Shown here: piece by piece, positions 1 to 50,900 of the stretch
How positions within the stretch are numbered: the first letter of the stretch is position 1
Layout: each line of letters opens with the position of its first letter
DNA from: Auanema rhodensis
Taxonomy: Eukaryota; Animalia; Nematoda
Direction: 5' to 3'
Assembly (NCBI GenBank): GCA_964057225.1
Contig: OZ059898.1
Coordinates: 11,780,001-11,844,000 of the forward strand
Length of the DNA stretch: 64,000 bases
Notes under the pieces: generated by a model
What the model was told of the DNA's origin: nothing
The model's input: the letters and a program-made list of their open reading frames with translations, nothing else
Databases searched by the model: none
Made by a program: the position numbers and the translations under genes

Positions 1-623
1 AAAAACACAATTGATGCTGAAATAGCTGCAATTGAAATTTGAGCAAATCAAACAATTATGTCAACAACGATAAATAGGAAAAACCTTGATAATTGAGTTC
101 ATATAATAAGGCTCAGATAACTTTACTTATTCTTCCACTGTTCTAGCTTCTCTGTTATTCATTTTTAAAAACTAAGAGACAAGTGAAAAGAGAGAGAGAG
201 AAAGAGAGAGAGAGAGGGAAAGGTCTGAGTAACTGGAAAATAATAAAGGATGAAGGGGGGACAGAGAGAAGAGAACTGCTTGCAGTGTCAGTAAAGAGTC
301 TTCAATTATTTAAATTTTTCATTTTAATCGTCTTCTTTTCTGTGACAAAACCATCGTATTCACGTAGTAAATAGATCTCAACATCTTTTCCCTTTTTTTT
401 CAAAAAAATTTTTAATAAATGAATACGTGCATCCTTTTTTTCTTTTTCTCTTCTTCGTCATTTTTAAAGATAAATATACAAGAAGCGACGAAAAAAATGG
501 ATAAAGAGATCATTTCGGCTTTTCTATTCTTCAACCCAAAAAAGGAAAAAGTCTTCTGTTCATCCTTAAAGATTTTTCCTATTCCTCTCTTGCACCCCCC
601 CCTCTCTCTCTCTCTCTCTTTCT

Positions 624-671
624 AGTAGCATAGGAAGGAGGGATTATAAAACCATTTTCGACTTTTCAGTC
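624..671 (+). repeat. Left terminal inverted repeat
   Basis: Reverse complement of 2834-2881 with one mismatch (position 6). Confidence 0.95.
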
Positions 672-902
672 ATTTTAACATATTTTCTTTCTCTTATGAC
701 AGAGAATCACCTCATTTACAACATTTTTTTGAAAAAAGTGTAAATTGAATGAATTTGAAAAGTTTTAAAAAGTGCTCATTTTCAATAATTTTTGTACATT
801 TCCAACCAATTTTTTCATTTTCACATTTTTAAAAAATATCAAGGATGTCGATTTTAGAAAGAAAGTGGTATTATCTCTGAAGTTAAAATATAAGGCCAAT
901 AA

Positions 903-1313
903 ATGAAATTCTCAATAGACCTGAAGCCTCTTACTATCTTCGAACTCATAGAATTAGCAGAAATATTGGGAATCAAGGATTTTAGAGGAGTCTTTATGAG
1001 AGATACTTTACCTTCTAAGATTAAAGAAAGAGAAGTAGGAATTCTCAATCTAGATTCTTCTAATTATAAAGGTACTCATTGGGTTTGTTATTCCAAAAAC
1101 AAAGAAAATATTTGTTACTTTGATTCTTTTGGATTAGATCCACCTCTAGAACTTCAACAATATCTCAAGAATAACAATAAGAAAGATAAAATACTTTTAT
1201 CAACATTTCAAATTCAAAAATTTGGAACACATCATTGTAGTTATTATTGTTTGTTACTTCTAAAATTATTAGAATCTTATGATTATCAAAAGTCAATAAT
1301 TGGTCTGATGTGA
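903..1313 (+). CDS. Maverick/Polinton adenain-like cysteine protease (PRO), 136 aa, intronless
   Basis: FRGVFMRDTLP, ILNLD, GTHWV (His), YFDSFG (Asp), FQIQ..GTHHCSYYC (Gln/Cys). Confidence 0.9.
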   Translation: MKFSIDLKPLTIFELIELAEILGIKDFRGVFMRDTLPSKIKEREVGILNLDSSNYKGTHWVCYSKNKENICYFDSFGLDPPLELQQYLKNNNKKDKILLSTFQIQKFGTHHCSYYCLLLLKLLESYDYQKSIIGLM

Positions 1314-1705
1314 ATGCCATCATCCATTACAACACCTTTTGGACACACCAGAGATAAGCTAGTTTTACTCAATTCATAAGTCTTCATTGTCTTATCAATG
1401 AACCTGAATCCTTTATTTTCTCCAATTATCAATTCATTAAGCTTTTGAGGTTTTTCTCTTTTGTCAAGATATCACTATTTCTATCTTTTTGAATTCCTTT
1501 AGCTGATAATTTATTCTCTTTTCCACCCCAAACAAAGTAAGTCTTACTAATCAACGCAACCATTCCATCACCTTCTTCAATTTTTAAATAATCCAGGTGT
1601 TCTTTTATCGTATGCTTTGAATTCTACTCTAGGGAAAAATTTATATTTTATCTTCTCGTATTCTTCTCTCAAATGTGGCTTAATCAGACTTTCAAATCTC
1701 CAGAC
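1286..1705 (-). pseudogene. C-terminal fragment of protein-primed DNA polymerase B (pPolB), 5'-truncated and frameshifted
   Basis: FESLIKPHLREEYEK..FFPR..YDKRTPGLFK/IEEGDGMVALISKTYFVWGGKENKLSAKGIQK../ENKGFRF..KTYELSKTSLS..VMDDGIHIRPIIDF*. Frameshifts near 1580 and 1438. Stop at 1286-1288 overlaps the PRO 3' end. Confidence 0.85.
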
Positions 1706-1918
1706 GCAACGCGACACGCAAACGTGTTGGGCTAGAGTGGAAGGGAGAAATGTGAGGGACGAGTGAGCAAGGAGAGAACCTGCCAACATCGCATTCTTCC
1801 ATTAACTTTTGTGAATATAAAAGAGTTCCTTTTCTTCTGCATTGTTATTTTCTCTTTAACTTCGAGTTTGTTAACAACTTTTCCCCTCTCTCTCTCTCTC
1901 TCTCTCTCACTCTCACTC

Positions 1919-1965
<47 letters not shown>

Positions 1966-2006
1966 TTAACCGAATGTGTTTAGAGTCCAGCCTCTGAAGT
2001 TCTAAC

Positions 2007-2839
2007 ATGTCCCGCCATTTTGTTTTGGTAAGTTAAACTTTAATTTTCTACTTTATTTTAGGTATCACTCATTATTTACAAGTATTGTTAATAAATAATT
2101 AGAACTTTTTTACTATTAAATGAACACTTTCAGGAAAATGGTCGCCGTATTCAAAAAAAGTTCAAGATTGCTAAAGCTCACATCGAATCGAAGTGAGAAT
2201 TTGATTTCCTATTATTTTTTATTTTGCTTCATTTTTTTAAATTTATATGTCTTAGATATCTTAAAGGAGTGGATCTGGACACGCAGGAAGTCTATAACGA
2301 TGCTCTTATCGAGATCATTGAGGAACTTGATGATCTATTTCGACAACAATCAGGTATGCAACCTCTGAACTTTTTTGCTTTTTTTCACAACAACTTTAAA
2401 AGCATTATTCTTATTTGATAAATTTAAAACTTTACCTGGAATCATCAAAAACATTTTGTATTTAATTCGTGGCCACAACGATCCGAGCATTCTTTCGCCG
2501 AAAGTTGACAACGTATATTTCTTTTTATTATTCCGTTAACAATAAATTATAATATTTGACTAATAGATAAAAATGTATACTTACTCAATTAACAACTCAC
2601 TATTGTATTTAGCGTTCCGCGACATTCAGAATCTTACGCCGACTGGAACGACAGATCATCGCTGTTTGCATTCTCGCGGATATTTCTGAACTTGGTATTT
2701 TTGCATATTTTTATAATGTTTTATGTTTTATTAATTTTGTATTATAGGTCCTGCAGCAAATGCAGATGAAGCTAGAGTCTTATCTCGAGCATATCTGCTG
2801 ATGGAGCGACTTTACGAAATGGCTTCGCAGCAAGACTGA
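2007..2839 (+). CDS. Six-exon orphan gene, 153 aa, inside the Maverick TIRs
   Basis: Exons 2007-2027, 2134-2192, 2256-2353, 2403-2512, 2613-2694, 2748-2839. Five GT-AG introns with matching phases give a stop-free 462-nt CDS (MSRHFVLENGRRIQKKFKIAKAHIESKYLKGVDLDTQEVYNDALIEIIEELDDLFRQQ...RAYLLMERLYEMASQQD*). Confidence 0.75.
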
Positions 2840-2881
2840 AAAGTCGAAAATGGTTTTATAATCCCTCCTTCCTATACTACT
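2834..2881 (-). repeat. Right terminal inverted repeat
   Basis: Begins AGTAGT on the minus strand; followed on the plus strand by TSD CTTTCT. Confidence 0.95.
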
Positions 2882-4132
2882 CTTTCTCTTTTTAAAAAAA
2901 TACAAGGAAAGACGTAAGCGGAAAATCGACGAGTAAATGAGCAATATATGCGCATAATTGTCTCAATAAATCTCTTAAGAAGATCATGTTTCTAATTTAA
3001 AAGATAGTAAAATGCTTAGTGATTTCCCTCTTTCTTCTATTTCTAGTTCCTTGATCATTTTTTATCTAATATGATTGCAGATGTATGTGCTTGGTTTCTA
3101 CAATATTGCTTTTCGAATGGAGTCAGATGAATATACGTAGAGGAATGGAAACGGATGTCCATGGTTATCCTAGATTCCTGGACAACAACGATGATATGCA
3201 CACCGATTATACTTCACACTTGCTGCATATATGTATATAGTAAAGATATTTCATAATGTTGTATTTGTTTCTAAGTAAAAAAAGAAAAAAAAAAGAAGAT
3301 GAAAATAATAATAATAATAATGTTTTAAATTATATATTAGAAAGAATTTTTGGTGTGAAAATCACATGTAGAGTATGGCTTTCTAATAAAGTTGTCCCAC
3401 CTCCTCGCTTTTCTTTCATTCATGTCGTCAACTCTTTACAACTTATTCGGAAAAATGACGTGATATCTATATATGCTAATTTTTTGTTGAAAAGTAAAAG
3501 ATACTTATAGCTTTATATATCAAAGATTGAAAAAATTGTCATGATGGCATGATATATGTACACAAAAGCTGGAAAAATCATCACTATTGTAACCAAAAAT
3601 AGCGATTCCGAATGAAAAATTTAAGAAAAATGCTTTTCATTCATCTGCTTGAACGTTATCCTTTGATTTCAATGGAATTATAAAGGTACATTAAACACAT
3701 TGAGAAATATGCTTGACTGCTGGGCAACAACGAAGGAAAAAGGGAAGTTAGAAGAGAAGATTAGAAAGAGAGAATAGGCAAAAGATGAGGAACAGACAAA
3801 GTTTCTTTAAGGTTTTTTCGACGATTCACACTCACACGTCATTTGTTAACGTCGTAAAAGAAGTAATAAAGAATTAAGAGTAGATAAATCTATTAATAAA
3901 TGGATTTGATGGTGTTGTATCCCCCCCCCACGCTAGTTTTTTCCTTAAAACTTCATATTTTTCTTTAATTTATGTCGATACTTAGTAGTACATGTACTAT
4001 ATAAGTATATGCTCTTGAAATTTGGGATTTGAACTCATTTGAAGTTCATGGAGAAAGCAGAGATTTTCTACAAAACCTCTGTCAAATGCTTGGGAAACAA
4101 TTAAAGATGAACGTACTAGTTGAGTAGTAGAG

Positions 4133-4136
<4 letters not shown>

Positions 4137-4198
<62 letters not shown>
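4137..4198. repeat. (GA)n microsatellite, representative of many (also ~1865-1962, 4451-4502, 8527-8580, 10250-10311, 12900-13023, 15279-15351, 15763-15829, 27266-27321)
   Basis: Direct inspection. Confidence 0.95.
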
Positions 4199-4449: not shown

Positions 4450-4506
<57 letters not shown>

Positions 4507-5761: not shown

Positions 5762-5833
5762 GCGTTCGTGGTGTAATGGTCAGCATGGATGCCTTCCAAG
5801 CATTCGACGGGGGTTCGATTCCCCCCGAACGCA
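5762..5833 (+). tRNA. tRNA-Gly(TCC) copy 1
   Basis: GCGTTCG/CGAACGC acceptor stem, CT-TCC-AA anticodon loop, GGTTCGATTCC B box, downstream T4 tract. Confidence 0.97.
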
Positions 5834-5940
5834 TACATTTTCCTTTTCCCGGTTCTTCCAACATGTTGGAACCTTATCTTCTAACCCCAGTGGTCGAGTA
5901 CCGGCTGTTTCTATCAGGATTGGGTATCTCTGAATCCGTA

Positions 5941-6012
5941 GCGTTCGTGGTGTAATGGTCAGCATGGATGCCTTCCAAGCATTCGACGGGGGTTCGATTC
6001 CCCCCGAACGCA
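5941..6012 (+). tRNA. tRNA-Gly(TCC) copy 2
   Basis: Identical to copy 1. Confidence 0.97.
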
Positions 6013-6119
6013 TACATTTTCCTTTTGCCGGTTCGTACGACTTGTTGGATCCTTATCTTCTAACCCCGGTGGTCAAGTATCGGCTGTTTCTATCAGGATT
6101 GGGTATCTCTGAATCCGTA

Positions 6120-6191
6120 GCGTTCGTGGTGTAATGGTCAGCATGGATGCCTTCCAAGCATTCGACGGGGGTTCGATTCCCCCCGAACGCA
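6120..6191 (+). tRNA. tRNA-Gly(TCC) copy 3
   Basis: Identical to copy 1. Confidence 0.97.
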
Positions 6192-6297
6192 TACATTTTC
6201 CTTTTCCCGGTTCTTCCAACATGTTGGATCCTTATCTTTAACCCCGGTGGTCAAGTACCGGCTGTTTCTATCAGGATTGGGTATCTCTGAATCCGTA

Positions 6298-6369
6298 GCG
6301 TTCGTGGTGTAATGGTCAGCATGGATGCCTTCCAAGCATTCGACGGGGGTTCGATTCCCCCCGAACGCA
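6298..6369 (+). tRNA. tRNA-Gly(TCC) copy 4
   Basis: Identical to copy 1. Confidence 0.97.
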
Positions 6370-6476
6370 TACATTTTCCTTTTGCCGGTTCGTACGACTT
6401 GTTGGATCCTTATCTTCTAACCCCGGTGGTCAAGTATCGGCTGTTTCTATCAGGATTGGGTATCTCTGAATCCGTA

Positions 6477-6548
6477 GCGTTCGTGGTGTAATGGTCAGCA
6501 TGGATGCCTTCCAAGCATTCGACGGGGGTTCGATTCCCCCCGAACGCA
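6477..6548 (+). tRNA. tRNA-Gly(TCC) copy 5
   Basis: Identical to copy 1. Confidence 0.97.
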
Positions 6549-6655
6549 TACATTTTCCTTTTCCCGGTTCTTCCAACATGTTGGAACCTTATCTTCTAAC
6601 CCCAGTGGTCGAGTACCCGCCGTTTCTATCAGGATTGGGTATCTCTGAATCCGTA

Positions 6656-6727
6656 GCGTTCGTGGTGTAATGGTCAGCATGGATGCCTTCCAAGCATTCG
6701 ACGGGGGTTCGATTCCCCCCGAACGCA
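6656..6727 (+). tRNA. tRNA-Gly(TCC) copy 6
   Basis: Identical to copy 1. Confidence 0.97.
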
Positions 6728-6834
6728 TACATTTTTCTTTTCCCGGTTCTTCCAACATGTTGGAACCTTATCTTCTAACCCCAGTGGTCGAGTACCCGCC
6801 GTTTCTATCAGGATTGGGTATCTCTGAATCCGTA

Positions 6835-6906
6835 GCGTTCGTGGTGTAATGGTCAGCATGGATGCCTTCCAAGCATTCGACGGGGGTTCGATTCCCCCCG
6901 AACGCA
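6835..6906 (+). tRNA. tRNA-Gly(TCC) copy 7
   Basis: Identical to copy 1. Confidence 0.97.
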
Positions 6907-7013
6907 TACATTTTTCTTTTGCCGGTTCGTACGACTTGTTGGATCCTTATCTTCTAACCCCGGTGGTCAAGTATCGGCTGTTTCTATCAGGATTGGGTAT
7001 CTCTGAATCCGTA

Positions 7014-7085
7014 GCGTTCGTGGTGTAATGGTCAGCATGGATGCCTTCCAAGCATTCGACGGGGGTTCGATTCCCCCCGAACGCA
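7014..7085 (+). tRNA. tRNA-Gly(TCC) copy 8
   Basis: Identical to copy 1. Confidence 0.97.
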
Positions 7086-7192
7086 TACATTTTTCTTTTC
7101 CCGGTTCTTCCAACATGTTGGAACCTTATCTTCTAACCCCAGTGGTCGAGTACCCGCCGTTTCTATCAGGATTGGGTATCTCTGAATCCGTA

Positions 7193-7264
7193 GCGTTCGT
7201 GGTGTAATGGTCAGCATGGATGCCTTCCAAGCATTCGACGGGGGTTCGATTCCCCCCGAACGCA
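7193..7264 (+). tRNA. tRNA-Gly(TCC) copy 9
   Basis: Identical to copy 1. Confidence 0.97.
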
Positions 7265-7371
7265 TACATTTTTCTTTTGCCGGTTCGTACGACTTGTTGG
7301 ATCCTTATCTTCTAACCCCGGTGGTCAAGTATCGGCTGTTTCTATCAGGATTGGGTATCTCTGAATCCGTA

Positions 7372-7443
7372 GCGTTCGTGGTGTAATGGTCAGCATGGAT
7401 GCCTTCCAAGCATTCGACGGGGGTTCGATTCCCCCCGAACGCA
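7372..7443 (+). tRNA. tRNA-Gly(TCC) copy 10
   Basis: Identical to copy 1. Confidence 0.97.
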
Positions 7444-7550
7444 TACATTTTTCTTTTGCCGGTTCGTACGACTTGTTGGATCCTTATCTTCTAACCCCGG
7501 TGGTCAAGTATCGGCTGTTTCTATCAGGATTGGGTATCTCTAAATCCGTA

Positions 7551-7622
7551 GCGTTCGTGGTGTAATGGTCAGCATGGATGCCTTCCAAGCATTCGACGGG
7601 GGTTCGATTCCCCCCGAACGCA
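7551..7622 (+). tRNA. tRNA-Gly(TCC) copy 11
   Basis: Identical to copy 1. Confidence 0.97.
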
Positions 7623-7758: not shown

Positions 7759-8015
7759 CTACTCTTGAAGTATAGGTGGATATAATCCGAAAGAATCAAA
7801 GTAGTGAATTTTTCTTTTACCTTGGAACAACAAACCCAACGAGTTCCTTGCCCATCTGAATAATCTAAATTTACAATTCTCACTTCTCTTGACTGTATTT
7901 GAGTAGGTAAACTGTCTCGCTTGTAAATTCCTCGGAAGTTCTAGATTCCCAGTACTTTTATGAGTTCTTTGAGGTAAGGATTTGTAAAAGGTCTCAGATA
8001 TTTCTTGAATTTCAT
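7759..8015 (-). pseudogene. Second, decayed Maverick PRO protease
   Basis: MKFKKYLRPFTNPYLKELIKVLGI*NFRGIYKRDSLPTQIQSREVRIVNLDYSDGQGTRWVCCSKVKE/IHYFDSFGLYPPILQE* aligns colinearly with the 903-1313 protein. In-frame stop at 7941-7943, 1-nt frameshift near 7810, catalytic His replaced by Arg. Confidence 0.88.
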
Positions 8016-8524
8016 TTTTAAGTGCATTTGGCTTTTTGGCAATTTTGGAAAATTTTTGAAAATATCACATTTTTGAAGAATTAAGACATGTTTTCGATTA
8101 AAATAAGAATTAAAATGGCTCACAATGTGTATAAACTAAAAGTGGTCGAAAAGGTGCGCTAGAACGGCAATATATACATTATGAAAACGCTTATTTTCAT
8201 GTTGTTGTTGTGCCAATGCTTTTAGTTTCCTGCTATTGATTACCAGGCTTTATCGCTAGTCTCCGGGGTTTGTAACAACTTAGATGGAACTCTATTCGAT
8301 GCATATCAACAGCCTCATTATCCTTGTCCATATCTCTGGCATTGTTCATGTTTAGAATCAGTTATTGAGTCCGCTTGACAATTGCCATGTGCAGTATCGC
8401 TAAGTTTTGTTGAACATTCACTGAAACAGCTACTCGAATCAGGAACCAGCTCCTTGCCACATGCTCACATCTGCTCCATAGAACTTTCCTTGAACCCACG
8501 CGTAAAAAACAAAATGTTAAGAGC

Positions 8525-8586
<62 letters not shown>

Positions 8587-10050: not shown

Positions 10051-10262
10051 ATGAATAGAGAAGATGAATCTGATATGGAAAATGACATGATGCTATTCAC
10101 TAACAACTATTCTGATGCTATTAATGACTTACGTCCAATTGATTGTAGCCGTCGAACAAGTACATTAACTATACAAGGAATGAAACGAAGTATCAGCAAT
10201 CTTCTACGACCTTCGAACACGTAAGTACCTTTTTATTAAAATTCTCTTTCTCTCTCTCTCTT

Positions 10263-10315
<53 letters not shown>

Positions 10316-12946
10316 TTCAACTGTAAGTATAGTCATTAAAACATTCTTCTGCAATGTTATGCCGTTCGAAACTTGACTGGAACTATCACCTCTTTTACCC
10401 AAAACTTGAACAAGCTTGATTGATTGATTTTTCTATCATTTTCCCAGCATTTTTCTTTGATGAAGAAGAAAAATCAGATTTATCTTGCTGTTGTTCTCAT
10501 ATAAAATTTGTTCTCTTGTGCAAGTTGCTTAGAGCTAGTTTTTTAGCTTCGTCACCCTTCGCTGTGAGCATAAGTTGACCTAAGCTTTAACAATATATAT
10601 CTTAGAACATTGTCTTGACAACAAAAAACGTTGTTGATTATTCAATTTACAAAGAGTAAATCAAAGATTTTAAAATCTTCTTTAACTAAATGCCTTGGTA
10701 GCTTACTATTCGAACTAGAATATTTACTTTGTGCTCTTCTCTTACCCTATTTGCTTACCTATCTATCTATCTATCTGCAAATCAACCTCAGAAGGTAAAC
10801 TGCCGACGGCGGCAGCCACAGAGACAGAGAACTAGCATTGTACGTCTTCTTAACATCACCTTCCATCATGTTTTCCCGAAGAAAAAAGGAACTAATAATT
10901 GATCCGTAAGTTTATTTCAAGATATTTCCTATCTATTCATCATATTTCCACACATACATTGTTCAATTTACTCAACTAAACTATTTTTGGACTTTATTCA
11001 TATTGTGGACTTAAGGTTATATTAATAAACAAGTAAGGATTAATGCAAACAAGTTCAAGTTTTGAAGAAATTTTCCAAAATTTCTATGATTTTCTGCATT
11101 CCACTATCTATCTATCTATCTATCTATCTTCTTTAAGTAATTTTTGATGCTTGATTATTCATTGGATTTTGTTGCATTTGCTTTGAAATACTACAGCAAT
11201 TACTTTTTTTTTCCGTATAAGACCTTTATTCTAATACTTATTATGAAGTAATTGTTATTGTTCATATTCTTTATTAAATAACATTTTATATTTAACATAT
11301 AAAAAATATTGATATCATTAATCTAGTTATCAGCTGGTTTTGTGGTTGAAAAGGAGGCAAAAAAAAACTGAAATGTTAGCTGTTTTTCCTATTATTTTGA
11401 ATATTTTTATATGCTATATACGTCTAAATTGTGATATAAATCAGTATTTATACTATAATATTAATTCTTTAATACATTTATAGAGATATTTCTTTTTAAT
11501 ATAATCATATAAGCTATTTGATATTAAATCTAAAATTAGAGATATTAGATGATCATACTTGAATGCATATACTATATTTCTGGTGCTTCTCACCATGATA
11601 TGTTATGCTTCTGGAGCTTCTGACGATGATTGTCGAACATTATCCAACAAAAAAAATGTTAAAGCAGGAAGAAGATGAAGTTGCAAACATATATGGATAG
11701 AAAACATTTGTGTAGACCATAGTATTCATATGGAATATCATGATGATGCTTTGTCTTTGCAACCAATTTGTTTTCATAAAGTTTGCTCTGCTGTCCAAAA
11801 GTCTTGGTAATTTTATTGAAAATGAAATACATAGCTGATCAAATGTTGTCTTCTTCTTCCTTCTTTTTATATTTTTTTTTGCTGTCTGCATATGTGTCAC
11901 AATTAATTGTTTAAAGATGCATCCTAATCAGTTATTTATGAATATTCTGCTATTTGAAAACATTTTTTAACAAAAAAAAATAAACGAAGTATTAAGCTAT
12001 GTGAATGAGTGAGCGTAAGTATGACAATATGCTGTTGCTGATGCTGATGCTGTTGCTGATGCTGATGCTGCTGTTCATGCTGATACTGATGCTTCTTTAT
12101 GTGTTTCAAATACTACTTAATAATAGTTCTTCTTTCTAAAGAACATTTTCCACAATCACATTCAATCTTTATCACTTACGAGCAGTCTTGAGCCAATTTC
12201 TGTTTTCTTTTTAACAAATATTACGTCTGTTTCCAGCTGTTACATTCTTGTATCTCAATAAACGATTATCACTTTCTCTTAGATTTCTCATTTCAACATG
12301 TTCATGCCTAATGAATTTCAACTAACTTAGTAAGTTTAAACTTTATTTTTAGCTTTTTTAAGCTTTCAAAACCTAATTTAACTATTTGGATATGGAAACT
12401 AGAACTTTGTTTTCGTCTTCAAAACGTTATGATACATTGACCTATGGTACATACACACAAGACACTACATTCGATTCAGTATGTGTTTGTTGCGAATAGC
12501 CAATGTAAATCACGCACATTAGCTTAGCCAACCAAGTTTTGCTCTCTTCATGTATCTCTCAAGGGATGGAGAAAGTTTTTCGAATCAAGCTTTAGAAAGA
12601 TTGTTTAAGAGAATAGAAGAGAGCACAGAAAAATGAATGAGCATGAGTGAAGGACTAAAACGGACGGAGATTTATCTAAAAAAATGGATAAATAGTTGTT
12701 TCACTTGGTCAGAGTATTTCAAAATGCTGACCAAACGATGTAAACGAATAGAAATACGAGTCTAATGCAAGCCAAGATGAGACGTTTTTGGTCTCAATGT
12801 ATGCTTTTGCAATTTCATTAGTTTCTTTTTTTGTCTTTAAATCTGTTCTATATTCTTTTCTAACCTCACTTTCAGTCAATTCTTGTATTATAGTTCTCTC
12901 TCTCTTCTTGTCTCTTTCTCTCTCTCTTCACGTCTCTCTCTTCACG

Positions 12947-13023
<77 letters not shown>

Positions 13024-14181
13024 TTAACTGTTTTCAATACCTGTCATACTTACTGATTTGAATAATTGCCAAATTTTTTAACGAAAAACCTGAGAAATAA
13101 CAGATTTTTGTCTAAATTTAGATTAATTTACATGTTTATGAGATTTTTTATTGAACAAAACTGATTTACAACGCTTTTTGTTTCCTTTTTTTTCAATTTT
13201 CAATATAAATATATTCTTATATACTATATATGTACATATATTCATATGTATCTCTTTCTAGTACATTCTGTATTTTTCTCTAATTCCTCTTAAAGTTTAC
13301 ATTTATATTCAATCTCCCTCTCTCTATAATTGCTCAGATTCAACTTATATAAGCTATTCCTTAATCGTTCAAGTTTCACCCTAACTTGTATTATAATGAC
13401 TCCAACAAATTATTATAAATATGATATCAAGCTGTAAGTTTTCAAGTTTTTATAAATTTTTTCATAAAAAATTTCAAGTTCTTTTCCATTTCATGCAACA
13501 GTTGTAGCTTGTGAACTGTTGTTTTCATGTGATTGAGATGAATCGTCTGCTCGAATGTCATTTTCAATCAAATTTAATTTCACGATGTTGTCTCGTGGAC
13601 AAAGCTTTTCCATTTAAAGCATATTTCTATTCGAAAATGTCTCAAATATGGTTTAGAAAACTATTGTCAAGACCTTTGCTCCTGATATTCATGAGTTCCC
13701 CCTATTTGATAGTTTCCTCAATGCTCGTGTATAATGCTGATACATGTGTCTATATTCTTTTAAGTAATGTTTAACCTTTCAAACAATGAACTTGACTGAC
13801 AGGCGAAGATAAAAAGAAATTTAGAGAGACATAGTGTGAGAAATGAGGAAAGAAAGAGAAAGAGGGAGAGAGAGATAGAGAGAGAGAGAATCCATTTACG
13901 CTCCTTTACTCAAAGCTTATTCTTGCTTAGTAAATCTAGTTCGTCTTGTTTTATTATAAAGTACATAATAGATCTTGTAAAGAGAAAGCAATCAACTGTT
14001 AGTAATTAATATATTTTTTTCTTTTTCCTTCTTCTTCTTCTTTCATTCATTATGTTGCTTATGAATTCTGAGTTCGTTTTGATGTTTTCAAATTGAAATG
14101 GTGAGATCTGAAAAAATTAATTAGTTCATTTCATAGTTATAAGTATATATCTGAAGAGAATAATAAGTTTGAGGGATAAAC

Positions 14182-18800: not shown

Positions 18801-21800
18801 AAATAAATAAATATATAAATATTTAGGGAAATATTGTAAAATTATTATATAATGTTCATTTTTTGCTTGAAATAGTCACAAGTTGTCCATTTATTTTTAG
18901 TGTAAGTTTTATATATTTTTTTGTTACAAAAAAAGTTAATTATAATATATAATTTAGATATTTAATCCACATCTTCGACAACTATTTGTGCCAGCTTTCT
19001 TAAATTGTTGGCTAGCAAAAAGTGCTTTACAAGCTATGATGGTAATGCTGTGAAAGTTAGAGCTTAAGATGTGATGATTTATGTTTAGAATGATTTGAAT
19101 AGAGTTGCTTTCATGTCACAATCAGCACTTTTTACTCAAATGTTTCTGCTTTTTACAACTTTAATATGTTTAGTATTTACAGGTAAATATAAATTATATA
19201 AAGAAGATAATCATAATTTTATTTGAAAGGAATGTGTACGATTGAACATATGCAAAGAGGTGGTGGAAGACAATTTGATTTATTTAATAGTTTTTACTTT
19301 GTAATGGTCACATTATCAACTGTTGGATATGGAGATTTGTATGTTATTTTCATTTTTTAGTTTTCATTTAATTTCCTTTTGAAGTTATCCGGATAATTGG
19401 ATGTCACGATTATGTGTTGTTATTCTTATTTGGTTTGCCTTGATTCTTCTTCCTTCTCAGGTAAATCATATTCAATATTCTTTTGATTTCAAATGCTTTT
19501 TGTAGTATTTTTAAGTTTTATTCTAAAAAATTATTTGAAAACTTAAAACTTGACATGAATTTGAATTGATTTCAGTTGGAATCTCTTGGTCAAACTTGGT
19601 CAGAAAGACAGAAATCTGGTGGAGAGTACGGTAGTCAATGGTCAGCTGAAAAGCATGTTGTCGTCACAATAACTCATTTGGAAGTGGAATTCATTAGAGA
19701 TTTTCTTGATGAATTCTATGCTCATCCAGAGAATCAAGTATGCTTACCATGAGATTCATCTGAAATGATGTTTGTTATTCATTTAGAATGTTGATGTTGT
19801 TCTCTTATCACCAGCTGAATTGGATAATCAGATGAGACTTCTGTTGAAAATACCATTATGGAGTCAGAAGGTTTACTATGTACGAGGTAGCTCTCTACGT
19901 GATGAAGATCTTGAAAGGTTAGAATGTTTTCCGAGAATTGGGGTAAATCATCATCTCTTTTCAGAGCCAAGTTATCAACAGCCAGAGCTTGTTTCATCTT
20001 AGCTGCCAGACATGTAAATCGAAAGATTGTTACGGTATGTGACTATTACTTGTTGATTAATCTATGATTTCCTTATTAAACTTATTGAACTTGCCTTTCA
20101 AACTGATCTCATTTGATTTCTCAGGATGAACATACTATTCTACGATCGTGGGCTGTGAAAGATTTTGCTCCAAATGTTAAGCAATATGTTCAAATTTTCC
20201 GTCCAGAAACTAAAATGCATATAGAGCACGCTGGTTTGTAAACTTATCACTCATACATGTTTTTTTGTAATTTTGTTTTTCAGAAGTTTTGGTTTGTGAA
20301 GATGAGTTCAAGTATGCTCTGCTTGCTAACAACTGTATTTGTCCCGGAATTTCAACCTTTATCACACTTTTGGTTCATACATCAAGAGGAGAGTATGTGT
20401 TTTTACTTCATTTCTGCTTAATCTTTCTTGTTACTTCTCTGTAGAGAAGGCCAGAAATCAACTGAGCCATGGCACAAAGTCTATGGATTCCATTCTGGTA
20501 ATGAGCTGTATCATATTCGCGTTGAAGACAGCAAGTTCTTTGGTGATTATGTGGGCAAAACGTTCACATATGCTTCTTTTCATGCTCATAGATCGTATGT
20601 TCTTTCTAAGCAACTTGATTATCTTTATTTCCTTTTGTTCCAGATATGGAATCGGTTTGATTGGTGTGAAAACCAATGAACATAACGCTAAAATGAGTCT
20701 GAATCCGGGAACCGCTCATGTTCTCGAAGGGACTGACATTTTGTATTATATGGGATTAACAAATGAAGAATCTCTTTATGATTTCCGAAAAGATCTTAAA
20801 ACTCAACAACGACGTGCGAACGTAGCATCCACGATTGCCAATATAGGTAGGTCAAACAGTATTAGATATCTGGTATTACTGCGAACGGTTAACGTGCAGC
20901 GATGTCCGAGTGGTTAAGGAGTTGGACTTGAAATCCAATGGGCATTGCCCGCGTAGGTTCGAACCCTGCTCGCTGCGATAGTTTTTGGTTTTTGTGAGAA
21001 ACAATTATAAGAGTTTTTTCCGGTTTAATTAATCTGATTAATTAAATATTTTCTCAAATTATTCAAATTAAGTTTTAGTAATGCATGAAAATTGTTTTTG
21101 AAGTTTAAAGTTTTCAAAATCAAGGTCTTATTCAGAAATTCAAAGATCAGTTCAATTATTTATTGTTTTTAGTATTTTACTTTTCTTTATTTCTTATAAT
21201 ATTTTTATATTTTTCAGGAAGTGTAGCTGTTGATGTGCCAGCTTTAGAAGAAGGACGAAAGAAAGTTCAGAAGAAGCGCGGTTTACTACAGAAAGCCAAG
21301 GTAGGATCTTTGACAACTGCCTTCCACTCTTATCAAAACATAATGTTCAGGCTACTGATGAAGTGAGATTAATCGAAGTTCCTGCTGAAGCAAGCCGTCG
21401 GCCATCTATCGCTATGGTCATGGAAGCTCATAATTCGTCAAGTGATGAGGATGATGATGAGCAATGTGACACATGTCGGGGAGTGTGCATCCAAGAAAAG
21501 TAACTTTACTGACATCAATGAATGTTACTAAGCCAATCTGATACCAATTTCAGGTTACAGAAGTCATATCCTCAAGTTCGTACATACATTGGAACATCTA
21601 ATACTATATGTCATACAATGAAAGAAAAACGACCAATGTGCTGCTTACAGCTCGACAAATCCTGTGCTCATTGCACACACACTGCAGCATACTCATACAA
21701 CTGGCGTAATCGCCCAATCATTCTTGCAGCTGATCGTACAAGCAGTGGAATGTATAATCTTCTTATTCCTTTAAGGTAAATTGAATTAAGTATTATATGA

Positions 21801-23510
21801 TATAGTATATAATCTTTTCTTTTATCACAGGGCTTACTATAGACCAGCACATGATCTCTATCCTATTATCTTATTATTAGAACTTGATGAAACTGATGAG
21901 CCCAATATAGCTTTCTTGGATGCCATCTCATATTTCCCGGAAGTGTATTGGATGAAAGGAAAAATTTCAAAGTATATCGCATTCCTATAAAACTTATGCT
22001 CATATTATTTCTTGCAGCTTAGACAAATTGCTGATTGCTGGCGTAGCTCATGCGGAACAAGTTGTTGTCGTAAAGGAATCAGCATCATTGGCCGAAGAGC
22101 ATTTTGCTGATTGCAGTACGATCATTACAGTTCAAAAGATTCATAGGTTAATTTCGATGTTGTACGTTCTCTTACTAAACATACTGTTCAGAATGTTCCC
22201 AACTCTTCGTATGATTACTGAGTTAACCCATGCGTCCAACATGCGTTTTGTTCAATTTAATCCAAATGATCCATATTCACTGGCACAATCTCGCTTTGAA
22301 AAGGTTATTTTATTGTTTATTTTAAGAACAAACTTATCTTTTTATCTGAAATATTTTCATAAATTCTTTAATTTTAAAAAATATTTAGAAAGAAAGAAAA
22401 CGAGGATCTCATATGCCCTTCATGTTCCGTTTACCATTTGCACAGGGAGGTGTATTCAGTGCTAATATGCTTGATCGGTATAATAAGCTTTTCCTTCGAT
22501 TTTTACTAACATTGAAAGAAATGTTATAGCTTGCTCTATCAATCGCTTATCAAACCCTATGTGGTTGAACTTAGTCGTCTTCTCTTAGGAATTGATCAAT
22601 CTGCTGGCAGTGGTTTCCTAACATCAGTAACATCATCAAGCTTCTTATTCACAATCTAAGCTTATATACTTTCAGTTTGTAATAACCAAAGAAGATCTTT
22701 GGATTAAAACATATGGACGCCTATATCAGCAGCTTTGCTCAACTGTATCAGACATTCCAATCGGTATATTCCGAACAAAGCTCATGGACTCCAAAACGGT
22801 AAAATTGATGATCATTTACTAACGAAAACAAGGAATTATTTTTGAAAAATTAGAATATTTTCTCATTTTTTCAGGTTAGCAATGCGGTAAGTTTCATATT
22901 TTAGAATATTTCATTAATCAAGTTGTATCATGTTGCTCATACCTTGCACATGCACACCTTATAGTAGAAACATCCTAGTTTTCATTTTTAATAATTTCAA
23001 TTAACCTTATTAAATTTTAAAAAATTAAATTAATAATTAGTAATATTCTAGGTTTCATTGGATCTTGAACGAAGATGCTGCTCAGTAGACTATGAACAAG
23101 CTGCTTATGCTCATCGGAAAGATATGTATGATCATGTAAAAAATAAAATGAGAAACTTGGGAATGTCTTGTAGTACAGATGGTTTGAAATATTTTGAATT
23201 CAGCTTCAATAACTTCTTGAATTTGAGGATTAGATGGAGATGAAGATAAGAATAATGTGATTTCGTTTGTAATCATCAATCCATCTGTTGATTTACAACT
23301 AGAGGAAGGGGATATTGTGTATGTTTCAGTAACTAATGATATAATGATTTGTTTTATTTCAGTTATGTTATAAGATGTCCTATAAGGGAAAATGCAAAAA
23401 CGAGTAAAATAAATCCAAGACGTGGTCTCAGACGAGGAAGAAATGTTCGTGAAACACTAGATACATTGGATTTAGCTGATTCAAGCGTTAAATTGCCAAC
23501 ATTATTGTAA
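10051..23510 (+). CDS. slo-2: SLO-2 (Slack/KCNT-family) potassium channel, about 28 shared exons plus alternative first exons
   Basis: Shared exons start at 18298. [19 protein letters not shown] (S1), [10 protein letters not shown] pore (~19308-19338), RCK motifs [67 protein letters not shown] at 23508-23510. The start shown is the most distal candidate first exon (10051-10220, after TTTCAG). Confidence 0.93.
14204..15285. repeat. Direct tandem duplication, 2 x 541 bp, bounded by (GA)n tracts
   Basis: 14211.. equals 14752..; the duplicated ORF-track entries are offset by 541. Confidence 0.92.
20896..20977 (+). tRNA. tRNA-Ser(TGA) in slo-2 intron 20847-21217
   Basis: GCAGCGA/TCGCTGC acceptor stem, CT-TGA-AA anticodon loop, long variable arm GGGCATTGCCC, GGTTCGAACCC, T5 terminator. 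Confidence 0.96.
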
Positions 23511-47911: not shown

Positions 47912-50900
47912 ATGAGGCTTAAAGTAGTTCATTCTCGTTTACCGCGTCATAGTGATATGGTCACAGCAGTTGAATGGATGAATAGCGAAGAAATTATTTC
48001 AATTGGTGATGATCGGCAAGTTTATAAATGGAAAACAAGTGGACTAGAACCTACTATGATATACCAATTACCTGAGTAAGAAATAATAGTATTTCAAACT
48101 TAATTGATTTGATTCCAGGAAATGCTATCCAACATCAATGCATTGGCTCCCACGTAATGTTAAAGGAGCTTCAGATGTGTATGCAATGACTACATCAGAT
48201 GGTATGTTCATGATCAGATTGTATTATTTGTTAATCTTTGTAGGCAAATTATATGTTATGAATAAATCTGGAAAAAGCGAAAAATCAGCAGAGGCTCATA
48301 AAGGAGCAGCAATTTGTGGTCGATGGAGCCCTGATGGGAGCGGGCTTCTCACCTGTAAGCTTAAAAGATCATGAAGCATGTATTCATATTCGCATTAAGG
48401 TGGTGAAGATGGAGCTGTTAAGATGTGGTCAAGAAGTTGTATGTTACGTTCAGTGATTGCTCAGTTTTCCAGCCCAGTACACTGGTTAGTTTTTTCTCTA
48501 TTTTGTGTTTTAATTTCGAATTCGATGAAGATTATTTCATATACAGTGTAACATGGGATAATTGTTCAACCAGAATATTATACTGTAATGGTGATAGTTG
48601 TTATATAAAATCACTGAAAATGCAGGTACATATTAAGAGTCACAGCATGTTTTTAATTAAAATTAATTATTAGATTTCTCCTTTGAAATGGAAGGCTCAC
48701 GATGGCATTGTTATGTGCTGCGATTGGTCTCCACAATCCGATGTTATAGTTACAGGAGGGGAAGATCTGAAGTTTAAAGTTTATATTATTCATAATTTCT
48801 CACGAAAAACAGAAGAATTTAAGGTTTGGGACAACTTTGGACGTATTCTATTCTCATCGGCTCCATACGATTATGCAATTTCGTCAGTGAAGTGGAGTCC
48901 AGATGGCTCTCTATTTACAGTCGGCTCTTACAATATTCTTCGATTATGTGATAGAGCTGGGGTAATAATGTCAATCTTAACATATATAGCTAATAAGATT
49001 AGTTTTCAGTGGTCACATTCATTGGAAAAATTATCAACAGGTTCTGTTTTGGAAATAGCTTGGTCATCCGATGGTACGCAACTAGCTGCAGCTACAGCCG
49101 GCGGTCATGTTATTTATGCTCACTTGACAGAAAAGTAAGTGGATTGAAGCTTTCCATGACAATAGGTTTCTAAATTTAATCTCACATACTCAAACACTTA
49201 CAGAAGATTGTCCTACCGTAATCTAGAAATTGTGCAAACAAAGCCGAACTCAGTTGAAGTACGAGATGTTTGTAGTGATATAGCAAAAGAAAGATTAGAA
49301 ACACGAGATAGAATAACACGAATATCTATTAAATATGATTATTTAATGATTATTACAACTTCTCAGCTTTATATATTTAGGTAAATTATTGATTAAGTTA
49401 TTGACAAACTATTCAATTTTAGTTCAAATAATTGGAATACACCGGTAATAACTGATTTGAAAGAGAAATCTCCTTCTATAATAATTCAATGTGAGAAGTA
49501 AGGCCAATTCTGAAACAATACTTGGAAACACGAATCTTCAATTCAGAATATTTTTACTTGCTGATGGAATAGGATTTTATATATACAACTACGATGGACG
49601 AAATCTGTGTGAAATCAAACCTCCAGGATCTGGCGGAGGAGCAATCAGTAATTTCTGTTGCTATTGATGACTTCTAACTTCGAGATATTGTAGGCGAATC
49701 AGCAACAGCTCTCTCTAATGATACAATTGCTTTGAGAGATCGAGGTGATCATAAAACTTTGCATTTCTTTGATCCTACAACATCTAAGCCACAGGGTGAC
49801 GGATCATTGCACCATGATGTAAGCACTACATTTTCAATTTTTTAAGTTTCTTAATATGCTTCAGGCAGATGTAGTTGAAGTGGCAATATCACAATGTGGT
49901 CCTTTATCTGAAAGAATTGTTGCATTCAGAGATCAAAACTCTAATGTATTCCTGGCTTTAATAAAAACATATAGAATTACACAACGTGTTGCTAAAATAG
50001 GCAAGTAAAAGCTTGAATATATTAAGTATATGCTATATTATATGATTACAGGCTCATTAGTTGAACAATTAATGTTCAATGATGTTAGTAATATATTAGC
50101 TGGAGTAGCAGATGGTAGATTGAGTAAGCTTATTCATATTTTACTTCGAGGCTGAGTCTCATTTACAGTAGCTTGGCCTGCGCCGTCTGTTGTATTTACT
50201 GATAGAAGTCTACTTCAACAAGCCACAATAGAAAAACCCTTGAGTAATTTAGGAAGATTTCCATATTTTCTCAAGTACATCATTTGATACAATGATAATA
50301 ACGTATTGTATATTTTAGTTTTTCGTTTAACTCCGCAGTACTACGAAGATCTGATGGTTCACTCTTGCCAATTATGATTTCGCCATTTCCAGCAGCACTT
50401 TTAACACATATTTCCAGTAACAAATGGGATCAAGCTATCAGATTATGTAGGCAAATCAATGTAGTTATAAGCAAAATATATATATATATATACAACGATT
50501 TCAAACAGGATGATGTACTATGGGCTGTGTTAGCTGGAATGGCAGTACAAGAAAAAAACTTGTATGCAGCTGAACTTGCATATGGTGCTTTAGATGAAGT
50601 AAGCTCGTTCGTGTTTTGTGTGCCTTCTGTAAAATTCGTTGAAAAAAACTTTTATAAAAATTCGTTTTCAGGGTGAAAAAGTTTCCTTCCTTGCAATGGC
50701 GCGTAATAGTCCTAACAAGGATGTTAGAAGTGCAATGCTTATACAATTATCGGGAAAAGTTTGTCAACTTCCAAACAATATGAATTGTTTCCAATTTCAG
50801 ATATCTGATGCGGATGTTATATTAGAAAGAAGTGGAAATACTTACCAATGCGTTATGCTGAACATTAAAATGTTTAGATGGGAAAGGTTTGAATAGAAAA

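What the first reader, a model, noticed from the sequence alone, without database searches (positions are those of the whole stretch)
618..2887. Miniature 'Pack-Maverick': 2.26-kb non-autonomous Maverick with intact ends carrying an intron-containing gene
Seen: 48-bp TIRs (47/48 identical, AGTAG termini) flanked by a perfect 6-bp TSD, enclosing PRO, a broken pPolB tail and a six-exon gene with its upstream region. Known: Mavericks/Polintons are usually 15-20 kb, make 6-bp TSDs, and in nematodes have been implicated in moving cargo genes between species. Inference: integrase, capsid, ATPase and most of pPolB are gone and about 1.1 kb of spliced cellular-type DNA is present instead, yet both ends remain. 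Such an element could be mobilised in trans, as Pack-MULEs are. Whether the deletion or capture happened before or after insertion cannot be told from one copy.
Basis: partly seen in the sequence, partly recalled or inferred. Interest (0 to 1): 0.92.

Follow-up and report, generated by a model that had tools for sequence, protein, structure and literature searches.

The report
Miniature cargo-carrying Maverick deletion derivative
A 2.26-kb stripped-down copy of a nematode virus-like Maverick transposon keeps both ends, its protease gene, a decayed polymerase stub and an intron-containing passenger gene; it is a neat example of known Maverick cargo and decay, with no proof that it moves.

Summary
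Window 624-2881 (2,258 bp) has 48-bp terminal inverted repeats (47/48) and a perfect 6-bp duplication, CTTTCT. Inside are an intact 136-codon adenain-like protease (PRO), the last ~140 codons of a protein-primed polymerase (3-4 frameshifts), and a GC-richer 1.13-kb module. That module holds a six-exon, all GT-AG, 153-codon ORF whose stop codon lies in the right repeat.

The 'Pack-MULE-like capture' reading is only partly supported.
- Nematode Mavericks are already known to carry intron-bearing, GC-richer cargo beside one end.
- No cellular parent of the ORF was found. Only single exons could be searched.
- Two public contigs show the same mini-layout (inverted repeat, PRO, spliced gene, inverted repeat) with different passenger genes. 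Each shares a short upstream motif with the window.
- The first 22 nt of the repeat match (20/22) the terminus next to the polymerase gene of an 18.5-kb, near-complete Maverick.

Best reading: an internally deleted, non-autonomous derivative of a cargo-bearing pPolB2-class Maverick. Whether it ever moved as a mini-element cannot be told, because one copy is visible and the source genome could not be searched. The polymerase stub shows relaxed evolution and PRO does not. That is a weak hint that the lineage persisted after losing its polymerase.

The parts
618..623 (.). left copy of the 6-bp target-site duplication (CTTTCT)
   Evidence: Identical to 2882-2887. It lies at the end of a (CT)n microsatellite.
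624..671 (+). left terminal inverted repeat, 48 bp
   Evidence: 47/48 match to the reverse complement of 2834-2881. The right arm's first 22 nt match, at 20/22, the tip of the ~45-nt inverted terminal arms that lie ~190 nt after the pPolB stop in the near-complete Maverick L005; the left arm differs from the right arm at 1 of 48 positions.
672..902 (+). AT-rich subterminal non-coding region upstream of PRO
   Evidence: 23% GC. Positions 845-874 are 30/30 identical to the first 30 nt of contig L001 and 34/35 to L002. It is loosely alignable to the subterminal regions of L011, L013 and the window's second remnant.
903..1313 (+). PRO: adenain-like cysteine protease gene, intact 136-codon ORF
   Evidence: Pairwise dN/dS to relatives is 0.17-0.33. 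There are no indels, and the lineage-specific branch is no longer than in relatives that keep pPolB.
1295..1703 (-). pPolB remnant: only the last ~135-140 codons, convergent with PRO and overlapping its end; broken
   Evidence: Aligns to the C-termini of pPolB relatives. It has 3-4 frameshifting indels, 1-2 in-frame indels, and no stop in the reference frame. It is 91.8% nt identical to L001 and L002. Its lineage-specific branch is about 3-fold longer than theirs by unpolarised counts and 5-10-fold with outgroups. Homology to L001 and L002 ends at 1703.
1704..2006 (+). upstream region of the spliced ORF (promoter-like, 5'-UTR-like)
   Evidence: 42% GC over 1704-1884. It contains a 27-mer at 1774-1800 that matches L011 at 24/27, next to that contig's inverted-repeat arm. 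It also has a TATAAAAG at 1816-1823, a 14-mer at 1871-1884 identical to L012 upstream of its cargo ATG, and a (CT)n microsatellite at about 1885-1962. No match elsewhere in the window.
2007..2839 (+). six-exon ORF of 153 codons (cargo gene, function unknown)
   Evidence: Exons 2007-2027, 2134-2192, 2256-2353, 2403-2512, 2613-2694, 2748-2839. All introns are GT-AG. Exons are 41% GC and introns 20%. No Pfam hit for the four exons of 27 codons or more (3-6), each searched alone. The exon-4 search of 1.84 billion representatives returned five weak multi-repeat hits; the two checked in Pfam are bacterial cadherin-repeat proteins. The exon-3 ORF found no homologue. The stop codon lies in the right repeat.
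2834..2881 (-). right terminal inverted repeat, 48 bp
   Evidence: Its innermost 6 nt supply the last sense codon and the stop codon of the ORF.
2882..2887 (.). right copy of the 6-bp target-site duplication

Best explanation
Window 624-2881 is a non-autonomous, internally deleted derivative of a cargo-bearing nematode Maverick/Polinton. The lineage is the one whose polymerase is the HNH-containing pPolB2 class. In this lineage the left end reads terminus, ~230 nt, PRO, then a convergent pPolB. One deletion running from inside pPolB to the edge of the cargo module would remove most of the polymerase and everything beyond it (integrase, capsid genes, ATPase). It would leave the left end, PRO, a ~410-bp polymerase stub, the cargo module (promoter-like region plus a six-exon ORF) and the right terminus. 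On this reading the spliced ORF is ordinary Maverick cargo kept in its slot beside a terminal repeat. It is not DNA newly captured in place of the core genes. Shown: the two ends were integrated together by a staggered 6-bp cut, which gave the duplication. Inferred from what is known of Maverick integrases: the ~20-nt tips are what the integrase recognises, because they are far better conserved than the coding DNA. The element encodes no integrase or polymerase, so it cannot copy or insert itself, and any movement would need those proteins from a full-length relative. Whether the deletion came before insertion (the element moved as a mini) or after it (decay in place) is open; I put about 35-40% on 'before'. 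The function of the 153-codon product is unknown.
For: Repeats and duplication. PRO identity. The stub is the pPolB C-terminus and homology to L001 and L002 stops at 1703. PRO followed by a convergent pPolB is the standard layout in four relatives, L001, L002, L019 and L020. The L001 polymerase carries an HNH/endonuclease VII-like segment (PHROG E=1e-9) and has Phytophthora relatives. Jeong et al. (PMC10748475) give both as hallmarks of nematode pPolB2. The repeat tip is 20/22 identical to the terminal arms beside the pPolB end of the 18.5-kb Maverick L005, although the polymerase tails are only 66% identical. Cargo-slot precedent: Widen et al. describe GC-richer, intron-containing cargo between one repeat and the integrase, and say most nematode Mavericks are incomplete. 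Here the exons are 41% GC and the upstream region 42%, against 28% for PRO. Parallel minis: L012 is 1,646 bp with 30-nt perfect inverted ends. It holds PRO, then a 4-exon, 212-codon serine-protease-like gene with its own AATAAA. L011 has 53-nt inverted repeats enclosing 1.49 kb, with a PRO fragment 92% identical to the window's and a spliced gene. Shared upstream motifs: 14/14 with L012 and 24/27 with L011, z about 6.6 and 7 against shuffles.
Against: No full-length element carrying this ORF, or the full 48-bp repeat, was found. The ORF has no 3' UTR or polyadenylation signal inside the element and ends in the repeat, unlike the L012 cargo. So the right junction may be a second breakpoint. In L011 the cargo module faces the other way relative to PRO and the near repeat, so the minis do not share one simple ancestral right end. 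The shared motifs are short. Contigs L001, L002, L012 and L014 all break just upstream of PRO. This may mean some relatives have inverted repeats of ~200-250 bp, in which case the window's right repeat is truncated. The cargo ORF has no detectable relative, Maverick-borne or cellular.
Confidence: 0.55

Rival explanations
1. Pack-type capture. A deletion derivative acquired about 1.1 kb of host DNA, a promoter plus a 3'-truncated spliced gene. The host DNA acted as filler between a break in pPolB and a break 48 bp from the right terminus. The result is a chimeric ORF completed by the repeat.
For: The stop codon and last sense codon come from the repeat, and there is no 3' UTR or AATAAA inside the element. 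Inverted-repeat identity ends exactly at the junction. Intron size, splice consensus and exon GC are host-like. There is no similarity to any Maverick protein in hand. Contig breaks in relatives hint at longer repeats, so the right arm may be cut.
Against: No parental gene was found in the window or by exon-wise searches. Intron-bearing cargo beside a repeat is the norm in nematode Mavericks. The upstream region shares motifs with two other Maverick minis that carry unrelated genes. Terminal arms of about 45-53 nt also occur in L005 and L011, so 48 bp may be the native repeat unit and not a truncation.
Confidence: 0.22
2. Fossil made in place. A full-length Maverick inserted here and was later whittled down by two or more local deletions. 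The mini-structure never existed as a mobile unit and is a one-off.
For: Most nematode Mavericks are incomplete or pseudogenised. The stub has several indels and an elongated lineage-specific branch. A second, unrelated, truncated Maverick end lies about 5 kb away, so decay is common here. Only one copy is visible.
Against: PRO has no indel, against 4-6 in the equally long adjacent stub (my binomial estimate, p about 0.02-0.06). PRO also shows no branch acceleration (my Fisher test on the singleton counts, run, gives p=0.0002). This is unexpected if both have drifted since one local event. However, recombination between lineages, or PRO's already fast rate, could mimic it. The same mini-layout recurs in two other contigs.
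Confidence: 0.4
3. Not an element at all: a chance inverted repeat around unrelated fragments, or an assembly artefact.
For: The flanks are low-complexity CT-rich DNA, which inflates the chance of a matching hexamer.
Against: A 47/48 inverted repeat is unique in 64 kb. Its tip matches a Maverick terminus. PRO and pPolB lie in the lineage's usual order immediately inside it.
Confidence: 0.01

Closest known systems
Cargo-bearing nematode Mavericks (Widen et al., bioRxiv 10.1101/2022.07.12.499685; WASP protease and KRMA kinase cargo)
   Same: Maverick termini, an adenain-like PRO and a pPolB. An intron-containing gene, GC-richer than the core, lies beside one terminal repeat. Incompleteness is common.
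   Different: Those elements are full-size. Polintons are reported at 13-25 kb (Jeong et al., PMC10748475), and Widen et al. place the cargo between a repeat and the integrase. Here only 2.26 kb remains, with no integrase. The ORF is neither WASP- nor KRMA-like as far as could be tested, and it runs into the repeat.
pPolB2-class nematode Polintons (Jeong et al. 2023, PMC10748475)
   Same: The polymerase of the closest relatives has an HNH-like insert and oomycete homologues. pPolB2 is well conserved and PRO poorly conserved, as they report (91% against 66% median identity in C. briggsae). They test for 6-bp duplications.
   Different: Their catalogue required at least 5 core proteins and repeats of 100-1,500 bp. 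This element would have been filtered out. Its repeat is 48 bp.
Pack-MULEs (gene-fragment-carrying non-autonomous Mutator-like elements; my own knowledge)
   Same: Terminal repeats plus a duplication enclose a spliced gene or gene fragment, with no transposase of the element's own. The ORF end may be chimeric.
   Different: A different superfamily and integration chemistry. Pack-MULEs are defined by identifiable parental genes and multiple transposed copies, and neither is shown here. Half of this element is still Maverick coding DNA.
Internal-deletion derivatives and MITEs of DNA transposons (my own knowledge; general description in PMC3014272)
   Same: The ends are kept and the enzymes lost, so such an element could depend on a full-length partner.
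   Different: For cut-and-paste elements the deletions arise by interrupted gap repair. How a self-synthesising element would produce deletions is unknown. The accessible literature search found no description of miniature Mavericks.
Public contigs L012 (Logan SRR10595406) and L011 (ENA ERZ22382522)
   Same: Inverted ends, PRO (whole or cut), one spliced GC-richer gene. Size 1.5-1.7 kb. Short upstream motifs are shared with the window.
   Different: Different passenger genes. The L012 gene is serine-protease-like and the L011 gene is unidentified. Neither has a pPolB stub. The L011 cargo is in the opposite orientation and no duplication is visible. The flanks of L012 are unknown.

Membership tests
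Maverick/Polinton (as the source of the DNA) | terminal inverted repeats | tested here: met
   47/48 over 48 bp. The tip is 20/22 identical to the terminal arms of the Maverick L005. At 48 bp the repeat is shorter than the 100-1,500 bp quoted for Polintons.
Maverick/Polinton (as the source of the DNA) | 5-8 bp (typically 6-bp) target-site duplication | tested here: met
   CTTTCT on both sides. The context is CT-rich, so the chance of a match is up to about 1%.
Maverick/Polinton (as the source of the DNA) | adenain-like maturation protease | tested here: met
   The family profile hits adenain 1avp at E=1e-6. 17 of 24 relatives match Peptidase_C5. The H, D, Q and C columns are kept. The window protein alone is below Pfam detection.
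Maverick/Polinton (autonomous member) | [quoted passage not shown] | tested here: not met
   Only the last ~135-140 codons remain, with 3-4 frameshifts.
Maverick/Polinton (autonomous member) | retrovirus-like integrase | tested here: not met
   Apart from the pPolB stub (and the separately tested PRO), no match in the window to any called protein of L005, L006, L001 or L003; no integrase was positively identified among those queries. No ORF of adequate size lies in 624-2881.
Maverick/Polinton (autonomous member) | capsid proteins and packaging ATPase | tested here: not met
   Same search. The L005 set includes a Pox_A32 ATPase.
pPolB2-class nematode Polinton | HNH endonuclease domain within pPolB; oomycete affinities | tested here: inconclusive
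   Met in the relative L001 (PHROG HNH/endonuclease VII, E=1e-9; Phytophthora hits). The window's stub does not include that part of the protein.
Maverick cargo module (Widen et al.) | intron-containing gene beside a terminal repeat, GC-richer than the core genes | tested here: met
   Six GT-AG exons end in the right repeat. Exon GC is 41%, against 28% for PRO and 32% for the stub.
Maverick cargo module (Widen et al.) | belongs to a known cargo family (WASP protease, KRMA kinase) | tested here: inconclusive
   No Pfam hit per exon. No similarity to the serine-protease-like cargo of L012. The joined 153-residue product could not be searched.
Pack-MULE-like gene capture | an identifiable cellular parent gene elsewhere | tested here: inconclusive
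   None in the window. None found by exon-wise searches. The source genome is not in the searchable collections; the best PRO hit was only 76% identical.
Pack-MULE-like gene capture / active non-autonomous family | several copies with the same internal junctions and different duplications; an autonomous partner with the same ends in the same genome | not testable with these tools
   There is one copy in the window. No whole-assembly search is available. The repeat was not found in IMG/VR or JGI metagenomes.

The most novel reading that the evidence does not exclude
Rhabditid nematodes harbour a recurrent class of 1.5-2.3 kb 'mini-Mavericks'. Each has ~45-53-bp termini, the protease gene and a Maverick-borne promoter cassette in front of interchangeable spliced passenger genes. 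On this reading they persist as non-autonomous lineages after losing the polymerase, with PRO still under constraint, and they add a small-format route for carrying genes with Mavericks.
Probability: 0.2. Interest if true: 0.75.

Novelty: new variant of a known kind. Interest (0 to 1): 0.5.

Why it matters
Mavericks are the best-documented vehicles of gene transfer between nematode species, but only full-size elements have been catalogued. Published screens demand five core proteins and long repeats, so a 2-kb derivative would be filtered out. If small derivatives that keep only the termini, the protease and a cargo cassette are a propagating class, the number of Maverick-associated passenger genes is underestimated. 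It would also suggest that the minimal cis-requirements for Maverick integration are the ~20-50 terminal bases. If this copy is only a decayed insertion, it is an ordinary fossil. It would still give a clean, annotated example of a nematode Maverick end, its duplication and a cargo ORF of unknown function.

Tried and rejected
1. Pfam, PDB and PHROG scans of the window's PRO and of the three stub ORF pieces separately. Nothing useful came back, and one sub-threshold T4_Gp59_N hit was dismissed. Identity was obtained through relatives instead.
2. Pfam on the L001 polymerase pieces gave nothing. The gene was identified as pPolB through named and PF03175-bearing relatives.
3. My idea that the right repeat was cut down from ~250 bp. 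It rested on contigs L001, L002, L012 and L014 breaking just upstream of PRO. It was weakened by the ~45-nt arms in L005 and the 53-nt arms in L011, and is left open.
4. Similarity of 1704-1773 to any terminal or subterminal sequence: none.
6. Exon-4 search of 1.84 billion representatives returned five weak multi-repeat hits; the two checked in Pfam are bacterial cadherin-repeat proteins, and all five are treated as spurious.
7. Exon-3 ORF search found no homologue.
8. Repeat searches in IMG/VR (two patterns) and JGI metagenomes found nothing.
9. The GTDB scan gave 2 hits in bacterial MAGs. By my calculation about 4 are expected by chance. They have no extension and no Maverick genes, so I treat them as chance.
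10. PRO-based locus searches gave only 43-47% relatives in metagenomes and none in IMG/VR.
11. L014-L017 were tested as possible multiple insertions of a truncated element. They are one locus seen in four samples.
12. Apparent mosaicism, with the stub 92% and PRO 79% identical to L001 and L002, is explained by the known gene-specific conservation.
13. By eye the L011 cargo looked retropepsin-like. Pfam gave no support, so I make no such claim.

Step left out: the joined 153-residue exon product has no reference, and long typed strings are barred. It was therefore never searched against Pfam, PDB or the protein collections, and never folded.

None of those places appears in my notes, in what my scripts printed, or in this report.


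Full report
OBSERVATION. The 48 bases at 624-671 and the reverse complement of 2834-2881 agree at 47 of 48 positions, and the match stops abruptly at position 49. No third copy exists in the 64-kb window, even allowing 8 mismatches. CTTTCT flanks both ends. The insertion site is the end of a (CT)n microsatellite, so I estimate the chance of a 6/6 match at 0.02-1%. That is still good support. The element is 2,258 bp long.

THE MAVERICK-DERIVED HALF. ORF 903-1313 is an uninterrupted 136-codon gene. It has 78 relatives in public data, the best at 74-76% identity. Alone it is below Pfam and PDB detection. A profile of 24 family members hits adenovirus protease 1avp at E=1e-6 and the ASFV S273R protease. 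Seventeen of the 24 members match Peptidase_C5. The window protein keeps the conserved H59, D74, Q105 and C112 columns.

On the opposite strand, 1295-1703 aligns only to the last ~135-140 residues of a long protein. That protein's relatives include a C. remanei 'DNA-directed DNA polymerase', C. briggsae CBG24020 and several proteins with Pfam DNA_pol_B_2. This confirms the 'pPolB tail'. It is broken by 3-4 frameshifting indels and 1-2 in-frame indels, with no stop in the reference frame.

The polymerase of the closest relative, L001, has an HNH/endonuclease VII-like segment (PHROG E=1e-9) and Phytophthora homologues. Jeong et al. (PMC10748475) give both as the signature of the nematode pPolB2 class. 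PRO followed by a convergent, slightly overlapping pPolB is the normal layout in four independent contigs: L001, L002, L019 and L020. DNA homology of the window to L001 and L002 runs from about 844 to exactly 1703 in both. That point is therefore the inner edge of what is left of the Maverick core. No integrase, capsid or ATPase homology exists anywhere in the window.

THE TERMINI BELONG TO A REAL MAVERICK LINEAGE. L005 is an 18.5-kb contig with a Pox_A32-type ATPase and a three-piece pPolB. About 190 nt after its polymerase stop it carries a 148-nt foldback with ~45-nt arms. The first 22 bases of those arms are 20/22 identical to the window's repeat tip, and a (TA)n tract follows. The polymerase tails of the two elements are only 66% identical. 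The tip is therefore far better conserved than the coding DNA, as expected for a sequence that the integration or replication machinery recognises. That last step is inference.

Exact-pattern scans found no further copies in IMG/VR or JGI metagenomes. Two hits in bacterial MAGs are what chance predicts and have no Maverick context.

THE OTHER HALF. From 1704 the sequence changes character. GC rises to 42%. There is a TATAAAAG at 1816-1823 and a long (CT)n tract. An ORF can then be assembled from six exons with canonical GT-AG at all five introns (49-106 nt), giving 153 codons. Exons are 41% GC and introns 20%, the usual nematode contrast. Exon 4 has the weakest acceptor and the lowest GC, but it is needed to keep the frame.

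The last sense codon and the stop codon lie in the innermost six bases of the right repeat. There is no 3' UTR or AATAAA inside the element. Nothing resembling this module occurs elsewhere in the window.

Exons 3-6, searched one at a time, give no Pfam hit; exons 1-2 were too short to search. Exon 4 searched against 1.84 billion representatives gives only five weak multi-repeat hits. The two checked in Pfam are bacterial cadherin-repeat proteins. The ORF around exon 3 finds no homologue. The joined product could not be searched, because no reference exists for it and long typed strings are barred. So 'no detectable relative' holds only at single-exon sensitivity.

WHAT IS ALREADY KNOWN. Widen et al. 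(bioRxiv 10.1101/2022.07.12.499685) report that nematode Mavericks commonly have a 2-5 kb region between one terminal repeat and the integrase. It is recognisable by higher GC, low conservation and intron-containing genes, and they interpret it as cargo. They also report that most nematode Mavericks are incomplete or pseudogenised. The window's spliced, GC-richer ORF beside a repeat fits that description. One deletion from inside pPolB to the edge of such a cargo region would produce the observed structure. No new capture event is needed.

PARALLEL MINI-ELEMENTS. Two public contigs reached through PRO relatives have the same compact layout.

L012 is 1,646 bp. Its two ends are a perfect 30-nt inverted repeat. 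That is the length a k=31 assembly graph would leave at the inner edges of a longer inverted repeat (my inference about the assembler). L012 holds a PRO ORF 75-78% identical to the window's. About 240 nt further on it holds a four-exon, 212-codon gene with an H...D...GNSGSG pattern. That gene has weak Trypsin_2 and PDB serine-protease matches, its own AATAAA, and 47% GC exons against 30% for PRO. It is plausibly a member of Widen's WASP family, but I could not test that directly.

L011 has 53-nt inverted repeats (96% complementary) enclosing 1.49 kb. Inside are a PRO fragment 92% identical to the window's and a spliced gene on the other strand.

The window's upstream region shares an exact 14-mer plus a CT-rich run with L012, at a similar distance from the ATG. 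It also shares a 24/27 match with L011, directly inside that contig's right repeat arm. Each stands about 6.6-7 SD above shuffled controls. These matches are short. They suggest, but do not prove, that the upstream region is Maverick-associated and not a host promoter. The three passenger ORFs are unrelated to one another.

HAS THE LINEAGE PERSISTED WITHOUT ITS POLYMERASE? In a three-way comparison with L001 and L002, the window has 31 unique substitutions in the stub, against 11 and 9 for the relatives. In PRO the three are equal at 32, 37 and 39. My Fisher test on these counts gives p=0.0002. Polarising with outgroups gives the same picture.

The stub has 4-6 indels (3-4 frameshifting, 1-2 in-frame, depending on the reference) and the equally long PRO has none. 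PRO's pairwise dN/dS is 0.17-0.33. So the stub has drifted while PRO shows no sign of relaxation. This is a hint that the lineage was copied, with PRO mattering, after the polymerase was lost. It is only a hint, for two reasons. The extra substitutions expected in PRO over that interval are about 7-11, which is within the noise. Jeong et al. also document exchange of pPolB genes between Polintons, which could equally distort the branch lengths.

UNRESOLVED. First, the timing of the deletion relative to insertion is unknown. One copy is visible, and the source genome is not in the searchable collections, since the best PRO hit is only 76% identical.

Second, it is unclear whether 48 bp is the native repeat. 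The ~45-nt arms in L005 and the 53-nt arms in L011 say yes. The contig breaks just upstream of PRO in L001, L002, L012 and L014 say some relatives may have repeats of ~200-250 bp. If the native repeat is longer, the right junction is a second breakpoint and capture becomes more attractive.

Third, the cargo module faces opposite ways in the window and in L011.

Fourth, the function and origin of the 153-codon product are unknown.

VERDICT. It is best filed as a non-autonomous internal-deletion derivative of a cargo-bearing pPolB2-class nematode Maverick. The Pack-MULE analogy is possible but unsupported, and mobility is untested. The recurrence of the same compact layout with different passenger genes is the most interesting lead.

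Noticed in passing
window 5762-7622 (+): A tandem array of 11 identical tRNA-Gly(TCC) genes with a 179-bp period. A lone tRNA-Ser(TGA) lies at 20895-20978.
   Followed up: no
window 7765-8182 (-): A second, unrelated Maverick left-end remnant directly beside the tRNA-Gly array. It has a subterminal region 75-82% identical to L013 and L015-L017, plus a PRO fragment covering about residues 1-82 (54% aa and 72% nt identity to the first PRO). The fragment has at least one frameshift and has lost its C-terminal ~40%. No partner end is present in the window.
   Followed up: partly
L005:11300-11632: The right end of the 18.5-kb Maverick contig. Two ~60-nt tandem subterminal repeats contain repeat-like cores, followed by a 148-nt foldback of two ~45-nt inverted terminal arms. 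A (TA)n tract and a ~1.7-kb near-perfect palindrome (11881-13560) follow. This end structure is unusual for a protein-primed element. No matching hexamers flank the foldback.
   Followed up: partly
L012:1-1646: A mini-element-like contig with 30-nt perfect inverted ends. It holds PRO and a four-exon, 212-codon serine-protease-like gene (H/D/GNSGSG) with its own polyadenylation signal. The gene is probably the WASP-type Maverick cargo of Widen et al..
   Followed up: partly
L011:1179-3361: A 1.49-kb unit bounded by 53-nt inverted repeats. It contains a PRO fragment 92% identical to the window's and an unidentified spliced gene. It sits between two 100% identical 101-nt copies of a C-type lectin exon. 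No target-site duplication is visible.
   Followed up: partly
L013:325-545: In this lineage the region between the terminus and PRO contains an internal inverted pair of ~45-nt repeat-like motifs about 130 nt apart. The subterminal region is therefore itself palindromic.
   Followed up: no
window 181-215, 601-617, 1885-1962, 4136-4198, 4451-4503, 8527-8581, 10243-10318: Many long (GA)n/(CT)n microsatellites. One lies exactly at the insertion site and another inside the element's 5'-UTR-like region.
   Followed up: no
window 22028-22462 (+) and 48683-49135 (+): Host-gene exons. One has a sub-threshold match to a Slo-like potassium-channel RCK domain, and one is a clear WD40-repeat exon. No tool named the host species. 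A nematode origin is inferred from the Caenorhabditis relatives of PRO and pPolB and from the splice-site style.
   Followed up: no
P0074: A UniRef entry from Heterorhabditis bacteriophora, related to this PRO family (73% identity over 38% of the query), is named 'Toxin-antitoxin system, toxin component'. This is probably a mis-annotation of a Maverick protease fragment.
   Followed up: no
P0135; L021, L022: A pPolB2-type protein is filed under a bacterial MAG (Aquella sp.), which suggests eukaryotic Maverick DNA mis-binned into bacterial genomes. The two MAG hits to the repeat tip are chance matches.
   Followed up: partly
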